A DNA stretch of 64,000 nucleotides from Auanema rhodensis (Eukaryota > Animalia > Nematoda): NCBI GenBank assembly GCA_964057225.1, contig OZ059896.1:15376001-15440000 (forward strand), given 5' to 3'. Each line of letters starts with the position of its first letter. Position 1 is the first letter of the stretch. Made by a program: the position numbers and the translations under genes. A model generated the notes under the pieces. The model was not told the origin of the DNA. It made no database searches and saw nothing but the letters and a program-made list of their open reading frames with translations. Below, piece by piece: positions 16,401 through 22,526 of this stretch.

Positions 16401-19400
16401 AGAGTTTAGATCCACATTATGTGGAAGATTTTTTGTTAACATATCGAGTTTTTGTACAAGATCCAACTCAGATATTTGAGAAGCTTATGCTTCTTTTTGC
16501 TGATAGTCAATATCGGGATAAAGTGAATTTTCCCTTTTAATTGCTTTTATTTATGTCTTTCTTATAGGTCGCTCGTGTATTTTTATTATGGGTTAATAAT
16601 CATTTTAACGATTTCGAGACTAATGATGATATGATGAAGCTGCTGGACAGGTAATTTATAGCTTTTTCCTGTTTGTTTCTGATCGTCATGTTTCAGATTC
16701 GAAGGAGCGCTAGAACGTGATGGCATGAACAGTCAGCAAAGTTTGTTGAATATTGCTCGTTCTGTTAAAGCAAGACCACGAACTATCAGTTATAGAAGAG
16801 GCAATAAGGTAAATATGATCTTGAACAATATTTTTGTATTAGTGAATTATTTAAAGGATGAGGTTCTTAACTTTACTATGGCTGGTGGAAAAGATATGGG
16901 AGTCGGAGTTTTCATTTCGTCTGTTGCCGTTGATACTCCAGCGGAAAATGCCGGACTCAAACGTGGTGATGAAATCTTAGAACTTAATGGTCAAACTGTA
17001 AAGTTTATCACTACGTCCAGGGCTGAAGAGCTTTTAACTGTAAGAATTTTCCATTTAATAAATATTTTATTGTTATTTTCAGGGATCTCTTGCTGTAAAT
17101 ATGATTGTAAAAAGCAATATATTTGGATATAAAGAATTAGTGGAAAGAACTGAAAGAGATAACGGGCCTAAGACTCGAACAATGTCATTAGCTGGTGCTT
17201 TGAACCATTCTAGAAATAGTATTCCTTCAGTTATACCTGTAAAAGTACCACCAAGAATACCGGGTTAGATCAAGTTAATTTTACACTATTCATTATAATT
17301 TTTTAGGTAATAAAACCAGTATACTGATGGATAAGATATGGACTATTTTAAAACCTTCAAAAGACGATGATTTCACAGATGAGACTCGGAATAATTCAAC
17401 TGAGCTACGCTCTAGCAGATCTAATCCCGACATTGCATCTTTATCTCAGTACTATGGTCCTGTAAAAAGTGAATGTCCAGAGCATGCTTTGAAGATATAT
17501 AGGTATTTATACATATTTTTTAGTCCCACAGTTTTGTTCAATCTTATAGAAGCGATCAAACCTCGAAGTTCTTAGCTGTTTATAAAGAGACAACTGCTCA
17601 AAATGTTGTGCAATTAGCTCTTCAAGAATTTGGAATGACCGCTGAAGGAAGTTTAGAATGGTCGCTTTGTGAATGCACGGTTACTGAAGATGGTGTTATT
17701 AAACAACGTCGATTACCACCACAATTAGAGAACTTAGCCGAGAGAATAAGTTTAAACAGCAGGTTTGTTAACATTATGAACACAAAATATTAAATATTAT
17801 GTTTTAAGATATTATTTGAAAAATAACAACCGATCTGATCCTTTGGTTCCTGATGATTTGGCACCCGAAATTTTAAAAGATGCTCAATCAACCCTATTAA
17901 TGTTGAATGCTCATGTAAGTTCTTTTGCTGGATTACTTTGTCTTTGATTTTAATTCCTATTTTTCTATCGACAAGTGATCGCATGTAAATCAAAATTAAA
18001 ATTCAATTTATATCACTTAACATGCGCGGTTGTGGGCTCCTCGTGTTTATTGAAAAAAAAAGTTCATCGTTTTTTGTTCAAGGTTGTTGCTGCTCAACTT
18101 ACCCTTCAAGATTTTAATGTATTCTCTTCAATTGAACCAACGGAGTATATCGACAATCTTTTCCAATTAACATCAAGGTTTTGTTATTATTACTTAATTT
18201 TCCTCAATAAATATTTTCTTAGATATGGATCACCTCGACTTCAGGAATTCGAAAAACTTTTCAATCGTGAAATGTGGTGGGTCGCAACCGAAATCTGTTC
18301 GGAGCGCGGTTTACAAAAACGATCTAAACTTGTTAAAAAATTTATCAAGATTGCAAGGTAGTTATTGTTTTGTTTTGCATTGTCATTGTACGATATTTAG
18401 GCATTGCCGAGAATTAAGAAATTTTAATTCTATGTTTGCTATTATGAGTGGATTGGATAAACCCGCAGTTCGAAGGCTACACAGTACATGGGAAAGGGTA
18501 TCAGGGTATGATAAAGTTATATAATTTTGCTTGTAAACTTCATTATATATAGGAAATATTTGCGTATGTTGGAAGATATACAACAACTTGTCGATCCATC
18601 CAGGAATATGTCGAAATACAGGCAACATCTAGCAAATGTTTCACAAGATCCACCCGTATGTCTAAGCAGTTTAAGACGTAATTGTTTTTCTCATTTTCAG
18701 GTTGTGCCCATTTATCCAGTAATAAAAAAGGATTTAACTTTCACTCATGAAGGAAATCCTACATATGTTGATAAACTAGTTAACTTCGAAAAACTTCGAT
18801 TAATTGGTAAAGCTGTTCATTCTGTGACTAAGTTAAGTAGCGTTCCATACGAATTATCCAGCATGGCTGAGCGGGTGAGTAATAAAATTAAACATTTTCT
18901 TTTTATTATCTAATCATTATTTTTAGAGTGGAGGCACTATAAACGATGCTTTACTTCATATGAATAATTTTGAAAATGGTAACGTTGCTACTATGCGCAA
19001 AGGGGGTCGACCGGTTAATCAAAATAGAAAAAAGGTTTTTCAGTAATTTTTTCCTATTTATAGCTATAATTTAGATATATGAACAAGCATTAATGGTTAG
19101 GAAAGTCAAAGCTTATCTTTCGGATATGAAAGTTATCGACCATGAAACTGAATTAGACAAGCTTAGTTACGAAATAGAACCAGCCCAGCCAACTGTTCGA
19201 ACACGTAGAGCACCTAGTCCTTCACCATCCTCACTGTCTTCACAGTCAACGGGATCAACATCCACCGATCAGAGGCGAATAATGGGAGCTAAGTTTGGCG
19301 TTGAATCACCTCAAGCTGTACAAAAAATGTTTTCATTGGTATCTTCAACTAAATTTAAAGGTATAACCTTTTCTATAAAAATTTCGAATAATTTTTAAAT

Positions 19401-20179
19401 TTAGGTGTTCCATCACCATCCTCTTCGCCAGCTTCGGGACGTCTTCATCGAAATGTTCCCAGAGTTACTCCACGTCATCCTTCGACATCATCTGTTCACC
19501 GTACACCTTCTTTCAAACAAGAAGCTGTCGATCTAAATTCAGAAACTAGTTCAGTAACTAATTTCCATGGAAGAGGTTAGTATTTCTATTCCGTTGAATA
19601 TTCTTCAAAAGCAATCGGTTATATTTGGAACAAAAATATGAGCATCATATCTTTCAGACGTATTGATTTGATTCAAGACGTGAGCAGTTTAAAATAAATT
19701 CAGATCTAGGTAAAGTGCAGTTAATTTATGTTCGCTAATATACTAACTGCACGTGATTCGGGTGTGAGCATGATTTTACTAACAAAAACTTCTACTAACA
19801 CTTTCTTTTTGCAACTTTAGTGTTTGCTTCTTATTCTGCTTCATTTCAGACAAGACTCCAATGTCATCAGGATGCTCTTCGCCTAATTCATTATATCGCA
19901 AAAAAATAAAAAAGTAAGCCATTTTTGTTGGAAGTTTAGTTACGCTTTTTTCTTCAGTTCTAATTTTCAACCAAGTCGATCATCTTATCCAGCTGGTAAT
20001 GGAGGTGTTCTTCTTGGTCACCGAATTGTACCTCATTTTAAGCCATCCAATGGAGTGCCTTTAAGAGAACATACTTTAAGTGCAATTGCAGATAGTAAGT
20101 TTTCCGCTGGAACTTAACGCTTACCCTTTGTTGTGTTTCAGAAACTCTTTTATCATCTGAACAAGTGTCTCGAGTTTAG
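13445..20179 (+). CDS. pxf-1: PDZ-domain Rap guanine nucleotide exchange factor (RAPGEF2/6 ortholog); many exons
   Basis: Two cNMP-binding-like regions (EGQVATCWYILLSGSV; SVIVNGLVEV), REM, PDZ (GVFISSVAVDTPAENAGLKRGDEILELNG), RA (QLALQEFG...GVIKQRRLP), CDC25 GEF (EMWWVATEIC, NFNSMFAIMSGL, DPSRNMSKYR, LVNFEKLR). C-terminus EQVSRV-stop is a class I PDZ ligand. Confidence 0.95.
14181..14308 (+). CDS. pxf-1: Putative alternative first coding exon of pxf-1
   Basis: ATG-initiated 42-codon ORF (MNSEILHSDSTCENYCEQFPDDF...) in a long intron, ending AG|gtactg in phase 2, the same phase needed by the downstream exon at ~14400. Confidence 0.5.
19658..19709 (+). other. pxf-1: Putative pxf-1 cassette exon (52 nt with in-frame stop, or 6-nt microexon 19704-19709)
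   Basis: Acceptors CTTTCAG (ends 19657) and AATTCAG (ends 19703); donor AG|gtaaag at 19710. Flanking exons are both phase 1. Confidence 0.55.
19741..19799 (+). promoter_or_regulatory. Intronic splicing-regulatory cluster (3x TACTAAC, TGCACG, GGTGTG, GCATG)
   Basis: TACTAAC at 19741, 19777 and 19793; TGCACG 19748; GGTGTG 19761; GCATG 19768. Confidence 0.65.
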
Positions 20180-20815
20180 GCTTATTACGCTTCTCTCTCC
20201 AAGATACGTGTATTATTACGGCTTCGACTTTATTTGCTACATATGTGATATCTTAAATTACTCTATATATTCATATATTTTTCTATGATTTTTTAAACAT
20301 TCAGTTCTTTTTATATAATTTTCTGTATACAATAGTAACAGTTTATGAATACACGAGGTGCTCTTATTTTCTTTATCCAAACATAGCTTAAATTCACTTC
20401 TTTGTATACAATCTGTGATTTTATTTTCTATTTATGCTTATCATCACTTGTTTACTTATTTTCTGTGACATATACTAATCTCTTGCCTTGCCATATATGG
20501 CATAATAATGTGGCATAATTTTCTATAATCTCGAAATAGTTCCCAATTTTGATGATTTCTATACGGTGCTTGTCATGTTTTTCAGGTTTTTATACGATGG
20601 CATAATAGAACTTTGTTTCTATTTTTACATCATCTCATGCATGCATTTCAGTTTGTACTTAGTAACTTGCTCAAATTGTGGTTAGCATTTGATATATACC
20701 AAAGAGATATAAATATTTTATTATTCGAGTTTAGTTAGTTATATGGTTTTCTGACCTCCTTATATCATCATGACCACAAAACTCTCAATGATCCTAATAT
20801 GATTCACAGATCGAG

Positions 20816-22526
20816 ATGGTCGGTGTTCACAAAATTATCAGCAGACTGAATCCTACAAACAGTGTGTTGTTTGTTTGTGATTTACAGGAAAAGTTCAGGT
20901 TGAAAAGATTTAGAAAAAATGCTTAAATACAAGTTCTTAATTTGCAGTAAGACTATCAAGTATTTTCCTGAAATTATTACAACTACAAAGAGATTGGTTG
21001 ATGCTTCTCGTATTTTGGGCATGAAAACTGTTGTAACTGAGCAGTATCCTAAGGGTCTTGGTCATACTGTTTCTGAGCTCGGAATTGACTCTAACGTCAC
21101 TCCAATCTACGAGAAGACCAGAGTAAAATTTGCAAAAAATATACAAATATTCTAACTTATGATTCAGTTTTCTATGTGTCTTCCTCAAACTGATACATTA
21201 TTAAGTCAATCGAAGAGCGTCATTTTGTGCGGAATTGAAGCTCATGTATGCATTCTGCAAACAACCTATGACCTTCTGGAGAGAGGCCTTGAAGTTCATA
21301 TTGTTGTCGATGCCGTAAGCAGTCGTTCTCTTACCGATAGGTACGTTTGCAACATTCAAAACGGTGATTTCAAATAAAAAAGAACCAATTCCACGGTGAT
21401 TCAGCCCAGCTGTTCATCATTACAAAGAAAAAACCAAAAAAGGTCACGTGTCACGTGAAAGTGATAGTTAACCCCTCATTCCCCATTTTCATTGTTGAAC
21501 GCACGTGAACCGGTTACATTACTTCGAAATGTTCCTCTCGTTCCTCTTTGCCCTGTGCCTCGTTAATTCACAATTCGCTTTTTGATCCTACCTAAATAAT
21601 GTTTTCTCCGAATATTCTTTCGAATTGACCCTGATAAGGGATTTAAAACTGAGTTCGATGCCAAATCACGTGTACAAGTCGGATAAAAAAATAGCGATCC
21701 CCTTCCATTTCTAAAATTTGTTGACTCTTTGTCTGCTCTGTGGCGCCAGCATGTTCTTCACATTGTGTATCATAGCTCTCCGCTGTTTTCACGGGCCTTA
21801 AGAATTCTGAATGTCTCCTACGTTTACCACGTATTCATCTCCTCTTTTTTGTCAATTCAACCATCTTGTCCACATTATCATTTGACTATGTTAACACAAA
21901 ACGTTCTGTTTCTTGTTTTCTCTTTGTTCTTTCCATTTCTCTATTATCGAACTAAGTTTACATACCCAGTTTTTGCTATACTTTGCTCAGGTATTAGTTT
22001 TTGATTAAGCAATCTATCTCAGCTTAGGATGATGCAATGATTTTCGGCTTACTGCAGATTATCACTCATGTTTTAGAGAAAAAGAAAATATTTTCCTCTA
22101 CTAACAGTAATTAGATATTTTTTTCTCAGAAAAAGATGAAAGAATACATTTGAACGTGTTATGATTATTGTTCTTGTACACTTAGCGCTAGTTGTTTTCT
22201 CAGTTTGAAGTAGCTGTCAGCTGATTATGACCGATTCTCGTCCTAGTGACCAGCACGTCATCTGTATTTACCGAATGGATTTTTGCTCCTCAATAAGCGC
22301 TTAAAGTCAAATCTGATAATTATATCTTCCTTATATAGAAAATGCTATCTTTAATTTCAGAAAATTTGCTTTCAAGCAATTGGAGAGGGCTGGAGCCATT
22401 CTGACTACTTCGGAATGTGTGATTCTGGGACTGGTTCAAGACTCTGCTCATCCTAAGTTCCGTGAAGTTCAAAAATTAATCATGACTTCTGCTCCTGATA
22501 CCGGTCTTGTGAATGCTAAAATCTAA
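20816..22526 (+). CDS. marb-1: Isochorismatase-domain protein (ISOC1/ISOC2-like); 4 exons
   Basis: LFVCDLQEKF, VVTEQYPKGLGHTV, FSMC...VILCGIEAHVCILQT, VHIVVDAVSSRS, TTSECVILGLVQDSAHPKF. Ends ...NAKI-TAA. Family call is firm; the symbol is recalled. Confidence 0.88.
21445..21672. promoter_or_regulatory. Cluster of four CACGTG E-boxes in the long last intron of the isochorismatase gene
   Basis: CACGTG at 21445, 21452 (tandem GTCACGTGTCACGTGA), 21502 and 21667. Confidence 0.5.

What the first reader, a model, noticed from the sequence alone, without database searches (positions are those of the whole stretch)
19577..19850. pxf-1 C-terminal switch: cassette exon followed by a dense STAR/SUP-12/RBFOX motif cluster
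Seen: this 274-nt intron is far longer than the usual ~45 nt. It holds two acceptors sharing one donor (19710). A 52-nt exon would read ...HGRDVLI-stop and delete the terminal EQVSRV PDZ ligand; a 6-nt in-frame microexon (ATCTAG) would preserve it. Within 90 nt downstream lie three TACTAAC, TGCACG, GGTGTG and GCATG. A 9-bp inverted repeat (GTGCAGTTA 19715 / TAACTGCAC 19744) overlaps the first TACTAAC. Established: CUAAC is bound by Quaking/ASD-2, GUGUG by SUP-12/RBM24 and (U)GCAUG/GCACG by RBFOX, and these co-operate in nematode muscle-specific splicing. Inference: a tissue-specific switch controls whether this RapGEF can dock on PDZ scaffolds, possibly gated by RNA structure.
Basis: partly seen in the sequence, partly recalled or inferred. 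Interest (0 to 1): 0.75.

Follow-up and report, generated by a model that had tools for sequence, protein, structure and literature searches.

The report
Conserved C-terminal splice switch in pxf-1
A real 52-base alternative exon in a nematode Rap exchange-factor gene swaps a long tail ending in a PDZ-docking motif for a short, deeply conserved DVLI end. The switch is already annotated in C. elegans; the binding-site cluster beside the exon is only partly conserved and untested.

Summary
All named motifs and the inverted repeat sit where stated. RNA contigs from four runs of one study splice the 52-nt exon (19658-19709) in. No skipping form and no 6-nt microexon was seen.

The genome is not C. 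elegans. It is 181 Mb, and the gene is the pxf-1 orthologue of an Auanema-like rhabditid.

The exon does more than delete the PDZ ligand. It ends the protein in DVLI, and that ending is kept through purely synonymous changes in all 9 Rhabditina loci examined. C. elegans RefSeq already lists paired DVLI and QVSRV isoforms, so the switch itself is known.

- **Conserved in Auanema sp. JU1783:** a block just after the exon's weak donor, made of GUGCAGUU, CUAAU, ACUAACUGCACGU and one further CUAAC. It is the only conserved intron sequence in this part of the gene.
- **Not conserved there:** GCAUG and GUGUG.
- **Wider pattern:** CUAAC recurs after this exon in five of eight rhabditid loci, but not in C. 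elegans.

My best reading is a downstream splicing enhancer bound by a STAR-family protein, possibly working through a hairpin. The muscle-specific three-factor model is not supported. Interest is moderate to low: a new member of a known kind.

The parts
19405..19575 (+). Constitutive upstream exon (...LNSETSSVTNFHGR, ends in codon phase 1), with donor GAG|GTTAGT
   Evidence: Spliced contig pieces in 4 runs; sequence; the conserved LN.ETS.VT motif is found in every orthologue
19576..19657 (+). 82-nt intron upstream of the cassette exon, with acceptor tctttcag
   Evidence: Junction 19575>19658 in the contigs of all 4 runs; no sequence conserved with Auanema beyond chance
19658..19709 (+). 52-nt cassette exon; it encodes (D)VLI, then stop TGA at 19669-19671; weak donor TAG|GTAAAG
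   Evidence: Spliced into the RNA contigs of X1-X4; DVLI-stop conserved with synonymous codon changes in 9 Rhabditina loci; corresponds to the C. elegans DVLI isoforms such as P0277
19704..19709 (+). Proposed 6-nt in-frame microexon (ATCTAG, after aaattcag); judged not real
   Evidence: The sequence is present; no such junction appears in the contigs; Auanema has no acceptor at the matching place
19710..19849 (+). 140-nt intron downstream of the cassette exon; it carries the motif cluster
   Evidence: Junction 19709>19850 in all 4 runs; the only intron of eight with a collinear conserved block against Auanema
19715..19752 (+). Hairpin candidate: 5' arm GTGCAGTTA (19715-23, starting at donor position +6) and 3' arm TAACTGCAC (19744-52), with a 20-nt loop
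   Evidence: Inverted repeat I1; local fold -17 kcal/mol, z -2.9; both arms conserved in Auanema while the loop differs in sequence and length, and the fold there has z -2.0; no compensatory changes are available
19735..19753 (+). Conserved core block: CUAAU half-site, first UACUAAC (19741-47) and UGCACG (19748-53)
   Evidence: A 13-nt exact match ACTAACTGCACGT with Auanema JU1783, reached by 1 of 1000 shuffles; GCTAAT is also aligned; the 20-mer is unique in the 181-Mb genome
19761..19772 (+). GGTGTG (19761-66) and GCATG (19768-72)
   Evidence: Present; not conserved in Auanema, where they read GAGTGTT and GCTTA
19774..19800 (+). Second and third TACTAAC (19777-83, 19793-99), inside an 11-nt direct repeat spaced 16 nt apart
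   Evidence: Direct repeat D1; the third copy aligns with TTCTAACA in Auanema and the second has no counterpart
19850..20179 (+). Three downstream exons (19850-19913, 19958-20094, 20142 onward). In the skipping frame they encode about 81 aa ending SEQVSRV, with stop TAG at 20177-79
   Evidence: Junctions; frames checked exon by exon; the tail resembles Auanema P0165 and ends like C. elegans P0151
20180..20706 (+). 3'UTR; the contigs end at 20704-20706; the distal half is highly conserved with Auanema
   Evidence: Contig ends; alignment A2

Best explanation
This is the 3' end of the pxf-1 (PDZ-GEF, RAPGEF2/6-type Rap exchange factor) orthologue of an Auanema-like rhabditid nematode. A 52-nt cassette exon sits in a 274-nt gap between constitutive exons.

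**What the exon does.** Including it ends the protein four residues later, in DVLI-COOH, and turns the last three coding exons into 3'UTR. Skipping it gives a tail of about 81 residues ending in the class I PDZ ligand QVSRV-COOH. Both ends are ancient and conserved, so the exon exchanges one C-terminal address for another.

**How inclusion is probably controlled (inferred).** The exon's donor is weak: GTAAAG, with no G at position +5. I propose that inclusion is helped by an intronic enhancer starting six bases into the downstream intron. This enhancer is a row of CUAAY sites (CUAAU, then UACUAAC three times) of the kind bound by STAR/KH-QUA2 proteins such as ASD-2/Quaking. The first site is fused to UGCACG. 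A hairpin may pair that first site and UGCACG with the bases just after the donor, which would let protein binding and donor access influence each other.

**Shown versus inferred.**
- Shown: the exon, its splicing, both reading frames, and the conservation of the peptide and of the core block.
- Inferred: that the exon is alternative in this species, which protein binds, the direction of the effect, the hairpin's role, and any tissue specificity.
For: - **Exon is spliced in.** Junctions 19575>19658 and 19709>19850 appear in the RNA contigs of four runs, with all eight introns removed.
- **Gene identity.** PDZ and RasGEF domains lie in window exons. The best relatives are nematode PXF-1/RapGEF2 proteins. 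Identity is 76-78% to Auanema JU1783, about 90% once an intron read through in one query is discounted, against 59% to C. elegans.
- **DVLI-stop conservation.** It follows an acceptor in all 9 loci: the window, Auanema, Diploscapter, C. elegans, C. nigoni, C. bovis, Mesorhabditis, Oesophagostomum and Pristionchus. All codon differences are synonymous: GTA/GTT/GTG, TTG/TTA/CTC/CTG, ATT/ATC, TGA/TAA.
- **Annotated elsewhere.** Proteins ending in DVLI are annotated or assembled in six more species. C. elegans has paired DVLI and QVSRV isoforms.
- **Independent RNA.** A transcript contig from another species also runs from the DVLI exon into the downstream exon.
- **Intron conservation.** Against Auanema, seven introns share nothing beyond chance (longest common run 5-7 nt). 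The downstream intron shares a 13-nt block, plus the 5' arm, GCTAAT and one more CTAAC.
- **CTAAC enrichment.** Within 250 nt after the DVLI codon there are 9 copies against 0.94 expected over 8 species, and 6 against 0.84 without the window.
- **Precedents.** CUAAC repeats are direct ASD-2 sites, shown by gel-shift and reporter assays (PMC3469465). CTAACC and TGCAC are among the top conserved motifs beside C. elegans alternative exons (PMC1500816).
- **Candidate binding protein.** The genome encodes STAR-dimer domain proteins.
- **Hairpin.** It is predicted in both species.
Against: - **Skipping not seen.** No skipping junction appeared in this species. Contigs drop minor forms, and all four runs come from one study, so alternative use here is inferred from the conserved skipping frame and from C. 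elegans annotation.
- **Patchy conservation.** C. elegans, C. bovis and Oesophagostomum have no CTAAC after the exon, so the element is not a universal requirement.
- **Duplication.** Two of the three TACTAAC copies come from a local duplication.
- **Hairpin is weakly supported.** Its arms are identical in the two species, so there is no covariation. The 211-nt region as a whole folds no better than shuffles (z -0.5).
- **No C. elegans tissue data.** pxf-1 is absent from the held supplements of two C. elegans splicing surveys, one across tissues and one of splicing-factor mutants.
- **Ambiguous binder.** UACUAAC is equally the SF1 branch-point consensus.
- **No direct tests.** No binding or genetic data exist for this locus.
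Confidence: 0.55

Rival explanations
1. ASD-2 (CUAAC), SUP-12 (GUGUG) and RBFOX (GCAUG/GCACG) act together to give a muscle-specific switch, possibly gated by the hairpin, and a 6-nt microexon is a third outcome.
For: All three motif classes lie within 90 nt of the donor. ASD-2 and SUP-12 bind juxtaposed CUAAC repeats and a UGUGUG stretch cooperatively in unc-60 (PMC3469465). GCACG is conserved in Auanema.
Against: - GCAUG is AGCAUG and is lost in Auanema. GUGUG is a bare pentamer, not UGUGUG or GUGUGC, and becomes GUGUU.
- The single copies are not significant.
- The conserved GCAC may instead be a hairpin arm or a MEC-8-type site, although MEC-8 prefers two GCAC motifs (PMC5311487).
- The whole-animal contigs carry the inclusion form as the only assembled path, which fits a muscle-only exon poorly.
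- The microexon has neither RNA nor comparative support.
Confidence: 0.12
2. The UACUAAC copies are branch-point (SF1/U2) sites. They allow an unusually long intron to be removed in a genome whose introns are about 45 nt, and are not binding sites for a tissue-specific regulator. Which junctions are used is then set by branch-site choice and splice-site strength.
For: All three copies match the full 7-mer branch consensus, not just CUAAC. Copies 2 and 3 lie 67 and 51 nt before the acceptor. The motif is not generally enriched in this window, with about 6 copies per strand against about 7 expected from composition (my arithmetic). That fits a special need of this intron.
Against: - The best-conserved copy is the first, only 36 nt from the donor and 103 nt from the acceptor, which is a poor branch position.
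- In Auanema the copies read CACUAAC and UUCUAAC, so only the CUAAC core is kept.
- C. elegans introns are reported to have no recognisable branch consensus (PMC3469465 discussion).
Confidence: 0.18
3. This is a poison exon. Inclusion introduces an early stop so that nonsense-mediated decay lowers PXF-1 output, and the DVLI protein is irrelevant.
For: The stop lies ahead of three exon junctions and about 0.8 kb of downstream sequence. The exon length, 52 nt, is not a multiple of three.
Against: - DVLI is kept by synonymous changes in 9 of 9 loci, including species where the exon is 45 or 183 nt. That points to selection on the peptide.
- The inclusion transcript is the assembled, dominant form in four runs.
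- In C. elegans arrays the pxf-1 cassette was not more included in smg-1 or smg-2 embryos (ratios +0.35 and +1.69; PMC2265522). It is uncertain whether that array exon is this one.
Confidence: 0.07
4. The motif cluster has no function. It is a chance product of an AT-rich intron and a 16-nt duplication, and the conserved block is conserved for some other reason.
For: Genome-wide, the reversed control pattern is more frequent than the real triple, 9 against 2. Copies 2 and 3 are a duplication. C. elegans lacks the sites.
Against: The core block is the only conserved intron sequence among eight introns. CTAAC recurs independently after the same exon in Diploscapter, C. nigoni and Mesorhabditis. 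The 20-mer is not part of a repeat family, and there is no Rfam hit.
Confidence: 0.08

Closest known systems
C. elegans pxf-1 (T14G10.2) C-terminal isoforms: isoform a (1470 aa, NP_001023389.1, ends SEQVSRV) and isoform b (1311 aa, NP_001023390.1 / AAL09434.1, ends SDVLI)
   Same: It is the same gene family and the same exon position, directly after the LN.ETS.VT exon. The DVLI-stop reading and the alternative QVSRV end are also the same.
   Different: The C. elegans exon appears much longer, about 183 nt to the likeliest donor, which I inferred from sequence without RNA evidence. Its downstream intron has no CUAAC and no matching hairpin. None of the PXF-1 papers I read discusses the two tails.
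ASD-2/SUP-12 element of unc-60 intron 1A: CUAAC repeats next to a UGUGUG stretch (PMC3469465)
   Same: Repeated CUAAC sits close to a GU-rich motif inside an intron that decides between alternative mRNA forms.
   Different: In unc-60 the element lies near the 3' splice site and blocks intron removal in muscle. Here it starts next to the 5' splice site of a cassette exon. The GU motif is a single unconserved GUGUG. Binding and genetics are untested.
Conserved intronic motifs beside C. elegans cassette exons (Kabat et al. 2006, PMC1500816)
   Same: CTAACC, TGCAC, GTGTGT and TGCATG are among that study's top motifs, and the block here contains CTAAC and TGCAC.
   Different: That study compared C. 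elegans with C. briggsae. At pxf-1, the two Caenorhabditis introns I compared share no such block.
Mammalian RAPGEF2/RAPGEF6 (PDZ-GEF1/2) C-terminal PDZ ligand
   Same: The domain order is the same in the orthologues (cNMP-like, RasGEF_N, PDZ, RA, RasGEF) and the C-terminus is of class I type. A relative ends in VSAV, and nematodes end in VSRV.
   Different: Binding of the mammalian tail to MAGI-type scaffolds is from my own knowledge and was not checked here. I know of no DVLI-type alternative end outside Rhabditina; annotated clade III and IV nematode proteins continue differently.
MEC-8/RBPMS GCAC sites (PMC5311487)
   Same: The conserved UGCACG contains GCAC.
   Different: MEC-8 prefers two GCAC motifs more than 6 nt apart, and only one is present here.

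Membership tests
PXF-1 / PDZ-GEF (RAPGEF2/6) orthologue | RasGEF catalytic domain | tested here: met
   PF00617 found in three window exon pieces, E 7e-15 to 8e-16
PXF-1 / PDZ-GEF (RAPGEF2/6) orthologue | PDZ domain upstream of the RasGEF domain | tested here: met
   PF00595 in window:16725-17132, E 1e-10
PXF-1 / PDZ-GEF (RAPGEF2/6) orthologue | cNMP-binding-like, RasGEF_N and RA domains | tested here: inconclusive
   No hit in the ORF pieces I scanned exon by exon. They are present in the orthologues by precomputed Pfam. I built no joined gene model.
PXF-1 / PDZ-GEF (RAPGEF2/6) orthologue | Closest relatives are nematode PXF-1 proteins, and the C-terminus is -QVSRV | tested here: met
pxf-1 DVLI cassette exon (C. 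elegans isoform b type) | An exon directly after the LN.ETS.VT exon that reads (D)VLI-stop | tested here: met
   Window 19657-19671, and the same in 8 other loci
pxf-1 DVLI cassette exon (C. elegans isoform b type) | The exon is spliced into mRNA and joined to the downstream exons | tested here: met
   Both junctions appear in the contigs of four runs, all from one study
pxf-1 DVLI cassette exon (C. elegans isoform b type) | The skipping isoform is also expressed in this species, so the exon is alternative rather than constitutive | tested here: inconclusive
   No skipping contig was seen, but contigs drop minor forms. The skipping frame is intact and conserved.
STAR-protein (ASD-2/Quaking-type) response element | ACUAAY core with a UAAY half-site within about 20 nt | tested here: met
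   CUAAU at 19735 and UACUAAC at 19741, plus two more cores. The definition of the bipartite site is from my own knowledge.
STAR-protein (ASD-2/Quaking-type) response element | Conserved in related species | tested here: inconclusive
   CUAAU and two of the three cores are kept in Auanema. CTAAC recurs in Diploscapter, C. nigoni and Mesorhabditis but is absent in C. elegans, C. bovis and Oesophagostomum.
STAR-protein (ASD-2/Quaking-type) response element | Bound by the protein, with splicing that depends on it | not testable with these tools
   This needs gel-shift or CLIP assays and mutants. The genome does encode STAR_dimer domain proteins.
RBFOX element | (U)GCAUG, conserved, next to the regulated exon | tested here: not met
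   The site is AGCAUG, occurs once, and is replaced by GCUUA in Auanema. The conserved GCACG is at best a secondary motif and overlaps the hairpin arm. A search for the Fox-1_C domain in the genome was blank, as was its control, so it is uninformative.
SUP-12 element | UGUGUG or GUGUGC stretch, conserved, beside the partner site | tested here: not met
   Only GGUGUGA is present, and it reads GAGUGUU in Auanema
NMD-coupled poison exon | The encoded peptide is under no selection, and the isoform is unstable and rises in smg mutants | tested here: not met
   DVLI is conserved through synonymous changes, and the inclusion form is the assembled one. The C. elegans smg array data show no rise, though which exon the array measured is uncertain.

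The most novel reading that the evidence does not exclude
DVLI-COOH could itself be a docking signal. Its hydrophobic residues at positions -2 and 0 fit the class II PDZ-ligand pattern. In that case the exon re-addresses the Rap exchange factor from one set of scaffolds (class I, -SRV) to another, rather than unhooking it, and this two-address system would have been kept throughout Rhabditina. In the Auanema lineage the choice would be made by an RNA switch: a hairpin ties the weak donor region to the first STAR site, and protein binding to that site opens it.
Probability: 0.2. Interest if true: 0.6.

Novelty: new member of a known kind. Interest (0 to 1): 0.35.

Why it matters
PXF-1 activates Rap GTPases in epidermis, neurons and synapse development, and where it sits in the cell is thought to depend on its ends.

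- **Two conserved ends.** The alternative DVLI end is as strictly conserved as the PDZ ligand across a whole nematode suborder. That argues both forms are functional proteins with different partners, a point the PXF-1 papers I read do not address.
- **A practical consequence.** The published C-terminal 3xFLAG knock-in (PMC9606220) was placed at "the C-terminus" of the locus. If that means the last exon, it would label only the QVSRV forms and would cover their free carboxyl end (my inference).
- **A compact test case.** The conserved CUAAY/GCAC block with its hairpin is a small, testable example of donor-proximal control of a cassette exon outside Caenorhabditis.

None of this overturns current ideas.

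Tried and rejected
- **Metagenome scan** for the two hairpin arms with a variable gap. More than 120 hits, all unrelated repeats or palindromes. None had a donor or a DVLI exon beside it.
- **Rfam** on 19000-21000, both strands, at a permissive threshold: nothing. An intronic snoRNA or miRNA is therefore unlikely.
- **Dispersed repeat.** The conserved 20-mer is unique in the genome, and the intron is single copy.
- **Fox-1_C Pfam search of the genome.** Blank, and blank in the controls too, so uninformative.
- **Supplements of two C. elegans splicing surveys** (PMC7706725, PMC5697891). Neither mentions pxf-1.
- **Supplements of Kabat 2006.** Not held.
- **Which pxf-1 exon the Barberan-Soler array measured.** This could not be settled. 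They list it as not a multiple of three, whereas the likeliest C. elegans exon I infer is 183 nt.
- **Orthologue look-ups.** The Necator and Dirofilaria proteins were not on record.
- **Hairpins at the matching place in other species.** Diploscapter and C. elegans fold no better than shuffles. C. nigoni has a different, weak one.
- **Whole-region fold.** Not better than shuffles.
- **Earlier-findings search** by words: nothing.
- **Joined gene model.** I searched the gene exon by exon, by reference.
- **Complex prediction.** I did not run a job on the DVLI tail with a PDZ domain, because the report does not claim a specific pair.
Full report
**1. What is in the sequence**

The gap between the constitutive exons is 19576-19849, 274 nt. 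The upstream exon ends ...HGR in codon phase 1.

An acceptor (tctttcag) opens a 52-nt exon at 19658-19709. It reads (D)VLI followed by TGA at 19669-71 and ends at a weak donor, TAG|GTAAAG. Skipping the exon keeps the frame through three further exons to ...SEQVSRV-stop at 20177-79. I checked the frames exon by exon. I did not build or search a joined model.

The inverted repeat is the strongest in the surrounding 600 nt.

**2. RNA evidence**

They are labelled only "RNA?", but their contigs have all eight local introns removed at GT..AG borders.

In each run the single contig on this stretch contains the 52-nt exon, with junctions 19575>19658 and 19709>19850, and runs on to a 3' end near 20705. 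No skipping contig and no 6-nt-exon contig was present.

Contigs show presence, not absence. The exon is therefore real and probably the major form in those samples, but its alternative use in this species is not shown directly. The other introns are 40-52 nt. The two flanking the cassette exon are 82 and 140 nt.

**3. Which gene, which organism**

Window exons carry PDZ and RasGEF domains. An exhaustive profile search with one exon, followed by a word search, found nematode PXF-1/RapGEF2 proteins as the best relatives.

The genome has 181 Mb in 112 contigs, so it is not C. elegans. Identity to Auanema sp. JU1783 is 76-78%, about 90% once an intron read through in one query is discounted. Identity to C. 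elegans is 59%.

"pxf-1" is thus right as an orthologue name. What is known about C. elegans regulators applies only by analogy.

**4. The exon is ancient and its peptide is selected**

I fetched the orthologous loci of eight species: C. nigoni, C. elegans, Auanema JU1783, Mesorhabditis spiculigera, Oesophagostomum dentatum, C. bovis, Diploscapter pachys and Pristionchus mayeri.

In all eight, as in the window, the intron after the LN.ETS.VT exon holds an acceptor followed by DVLI-stop. The codons differ only synonymously:

| Residue | Codons seen |
|---|---|
| D | GAC, GAT |
| V | GTA, GTT, GTG |
| L | TTG, TTA, CTC, CTG |
| I | ATT, ATC |
| stop | TGA, TAA |

The rest of the exon varies in sequence and length: 45 nt in Auanema and about 183 nt in Caenorhabditis, going by the likeliest donors. 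This is the signature of selection on the peptide. It argues against a mere truncation or a decay-only poison exon.

C. elegans RefSeq and UniProt already list three N-terminal variants, each with both ends: 1470/1311, 1347/1188 and 1305/1146 aa. The switch itself is therefore known annotation. An independent transcript contig from another species also runs from the DVLI exon into the next exon.

The QVSRV end is kept in Caenorhabditis, Auanema, Pristionchus and Trichuris, and as QFSRV in Steinernema.

**5. The motif cluster**

*Statistics.* Three TACTAAC within 59 nt compare with 0.013 expected per 140 nt. There are two caveats:
- Copies 2 and 3 form an 11-nt direct repeat 16 nt apart, so they are probably one duplication.
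- In the whole genome the triple occurs twice, while a reversed control pattern occurs nine times.

The cluster is therefore remarkable for where it lies, not for existing at all.

*Comparison with Auanema.* Seven of the eight introns in this part of the gene share no more with Auanema than shuffled sequence does, with a longest common run of 5-7 nt. The downstream intron shares the 13-mer ACTAACTGCACGT, which 1 of 1000 shuffles reached. The alignment shows:
- Kept: the 5' arm GTGCAGTT, GCTAAT, and the third CTAAC.
- Not kept: the second TACTAAC, GCATG (now GCTTA) and GTGTG (now GTGTT).

*Wider survey.* CTAAC within 250 nt after the DVLI codon occurs 9 times against 0.94 expected. Leaving the window out, the count is 6 against 0.84. 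It is present in Auanema, Diploscapter, C. nigoni and Mesorhabditis and absent in C. elegans, C. bovis and Oesophagostomum. The species are not independent, and the exon ends outside the window are inferred.

*Other checks.* The conserved 20-mer is unique in the genome. Nothing in Rfam matches.

**6. The hairpin**

The local fold is -17 kcal/mol with z -2.9 in the window. In Auanema it is -16 kcal/mol with z -2.0, and the stem reaches into donor positions +2 to +5. Both arms are conserved while the loop differs in sequence and length.

The arms are identical in the two species, so there is no covariation to test. The 3' arm is also the protein-site block. The 5' arm lies beyond the donor consensus and has no other obvious reason to be conserved, which mildly favours pairing.

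No matching hairpin is predicted in Caenorhabditis or Diploscapter. I put the hairpin being functional at about 0.4.

**7. Mechanism**

- **Established for other genes:** ASD-2 binds CUAAC repeats directly and cooperates with SUP-12 on UGUGUG in unc-60 (PMC3469465). CTAACC and TGCAC are top conserved motifs beside C. elegans alternative exons (PMC1500816). MEC-8 binds paired GCAC motifs (PMC5311487).
- **From my own knowledge, not checked here:** Quaking-type proteins bound downstream of an exon usually promote its inclusion. The STAR site is bipartite. UACUAAC is also the SF1 branch-site consensus. GCACG is a lower-affinity RBFOX site.
- **Inference:** the weak donor, which lacks G at +5 in both species, depends on a donor-proximal CUAAY enhancer bound by a STAR protein. 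The genome encodes such proteins.

The branch-site reading is the main rival. The first and best-conserved copy is badly placed for a branch, at 36 nt from the donor and 103 nt from the acceptor. Copies 2 and 3 are not.

The RBFOX and SUP-12 parts fail the conservation test. Muscle specificity has no support, and a form that dominates whole-animal contigs fits a muscle-only exon poorly.

**8. Literature on pxf-1 splicing**

Barberan-Soler and Zahler list a pxf-1 cassette exon whose length is not a multiple of three. It changes between L1 and L4 and is not raised in smg mutants (PMC2265522). I could not establish that it is this exon.

Two functional PXF-1 papers do not discuss isoforms. Two C. 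elegans splicing surveys do not list the gene in the supplements held here.

**9. Verdict**

The exon and the switch are real but already annotated in C. elegans. Two things are new here: the depth of DVLI conservation, and a conserved STAR-type block with a hairpin in the Auanema lineage.

Noticed in passing
window 20440-20720 (3'UTR) against L004 8900-9190: The distal 3'UTR is about 85-90% identical to Auanema sp. JU1783, with exact blocks of 22-31 nt. It is far better conserved than the coding exons or introns of the same gene. It holds UACUAAU, two UGGCAUAAU, UGCAUGCAUG and two TTTCAG-type acceptor-like sites. There is no Rfam hit, and it was not recognisable in the more distant species.
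   Followed up: partly
window 19774-19800: The second and third TACTAAC lie in an 11-nt direct repeat spaced 16 nt apart, which is probably a lineage-specific duplication of one CUAAC element. Auanema has a single copy there.
   Followed up: yes
G000:C3:5776923-5776959: This is the only other triple TACTAAC cluster in the 181-Mb genome. It looks like a low-complexity ACT/AAC-rich repeat, possibly coding.
   Followed up: no
L003 10424-10478 and L002 10110-10142: In C. elegans and C. nigoni the stretch just before the DVLI-exon acceptor, GTGTAGAG...AGTGTAGTGCATTTCCAG, is conserved. This suggests that in Caenorhabditis any regulatory element lies upstream of the exon rather than downstream.
   Followed up: no
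window 19819-19820: A TTTAG acceptor-like site lies 29 nt before the used acceptor at 19849. Using it would shift the frame. No contig uses it.
   Followed up: partly
L004 and L130, downstream of the gene: An isochorismatase-family gene follows pxf-1 in both Auanema and Pristionchus, and the C. auriculariae protein model fuses the two genes. This points to conserved gene order and a likely annotation fusion.
   Followed up: no
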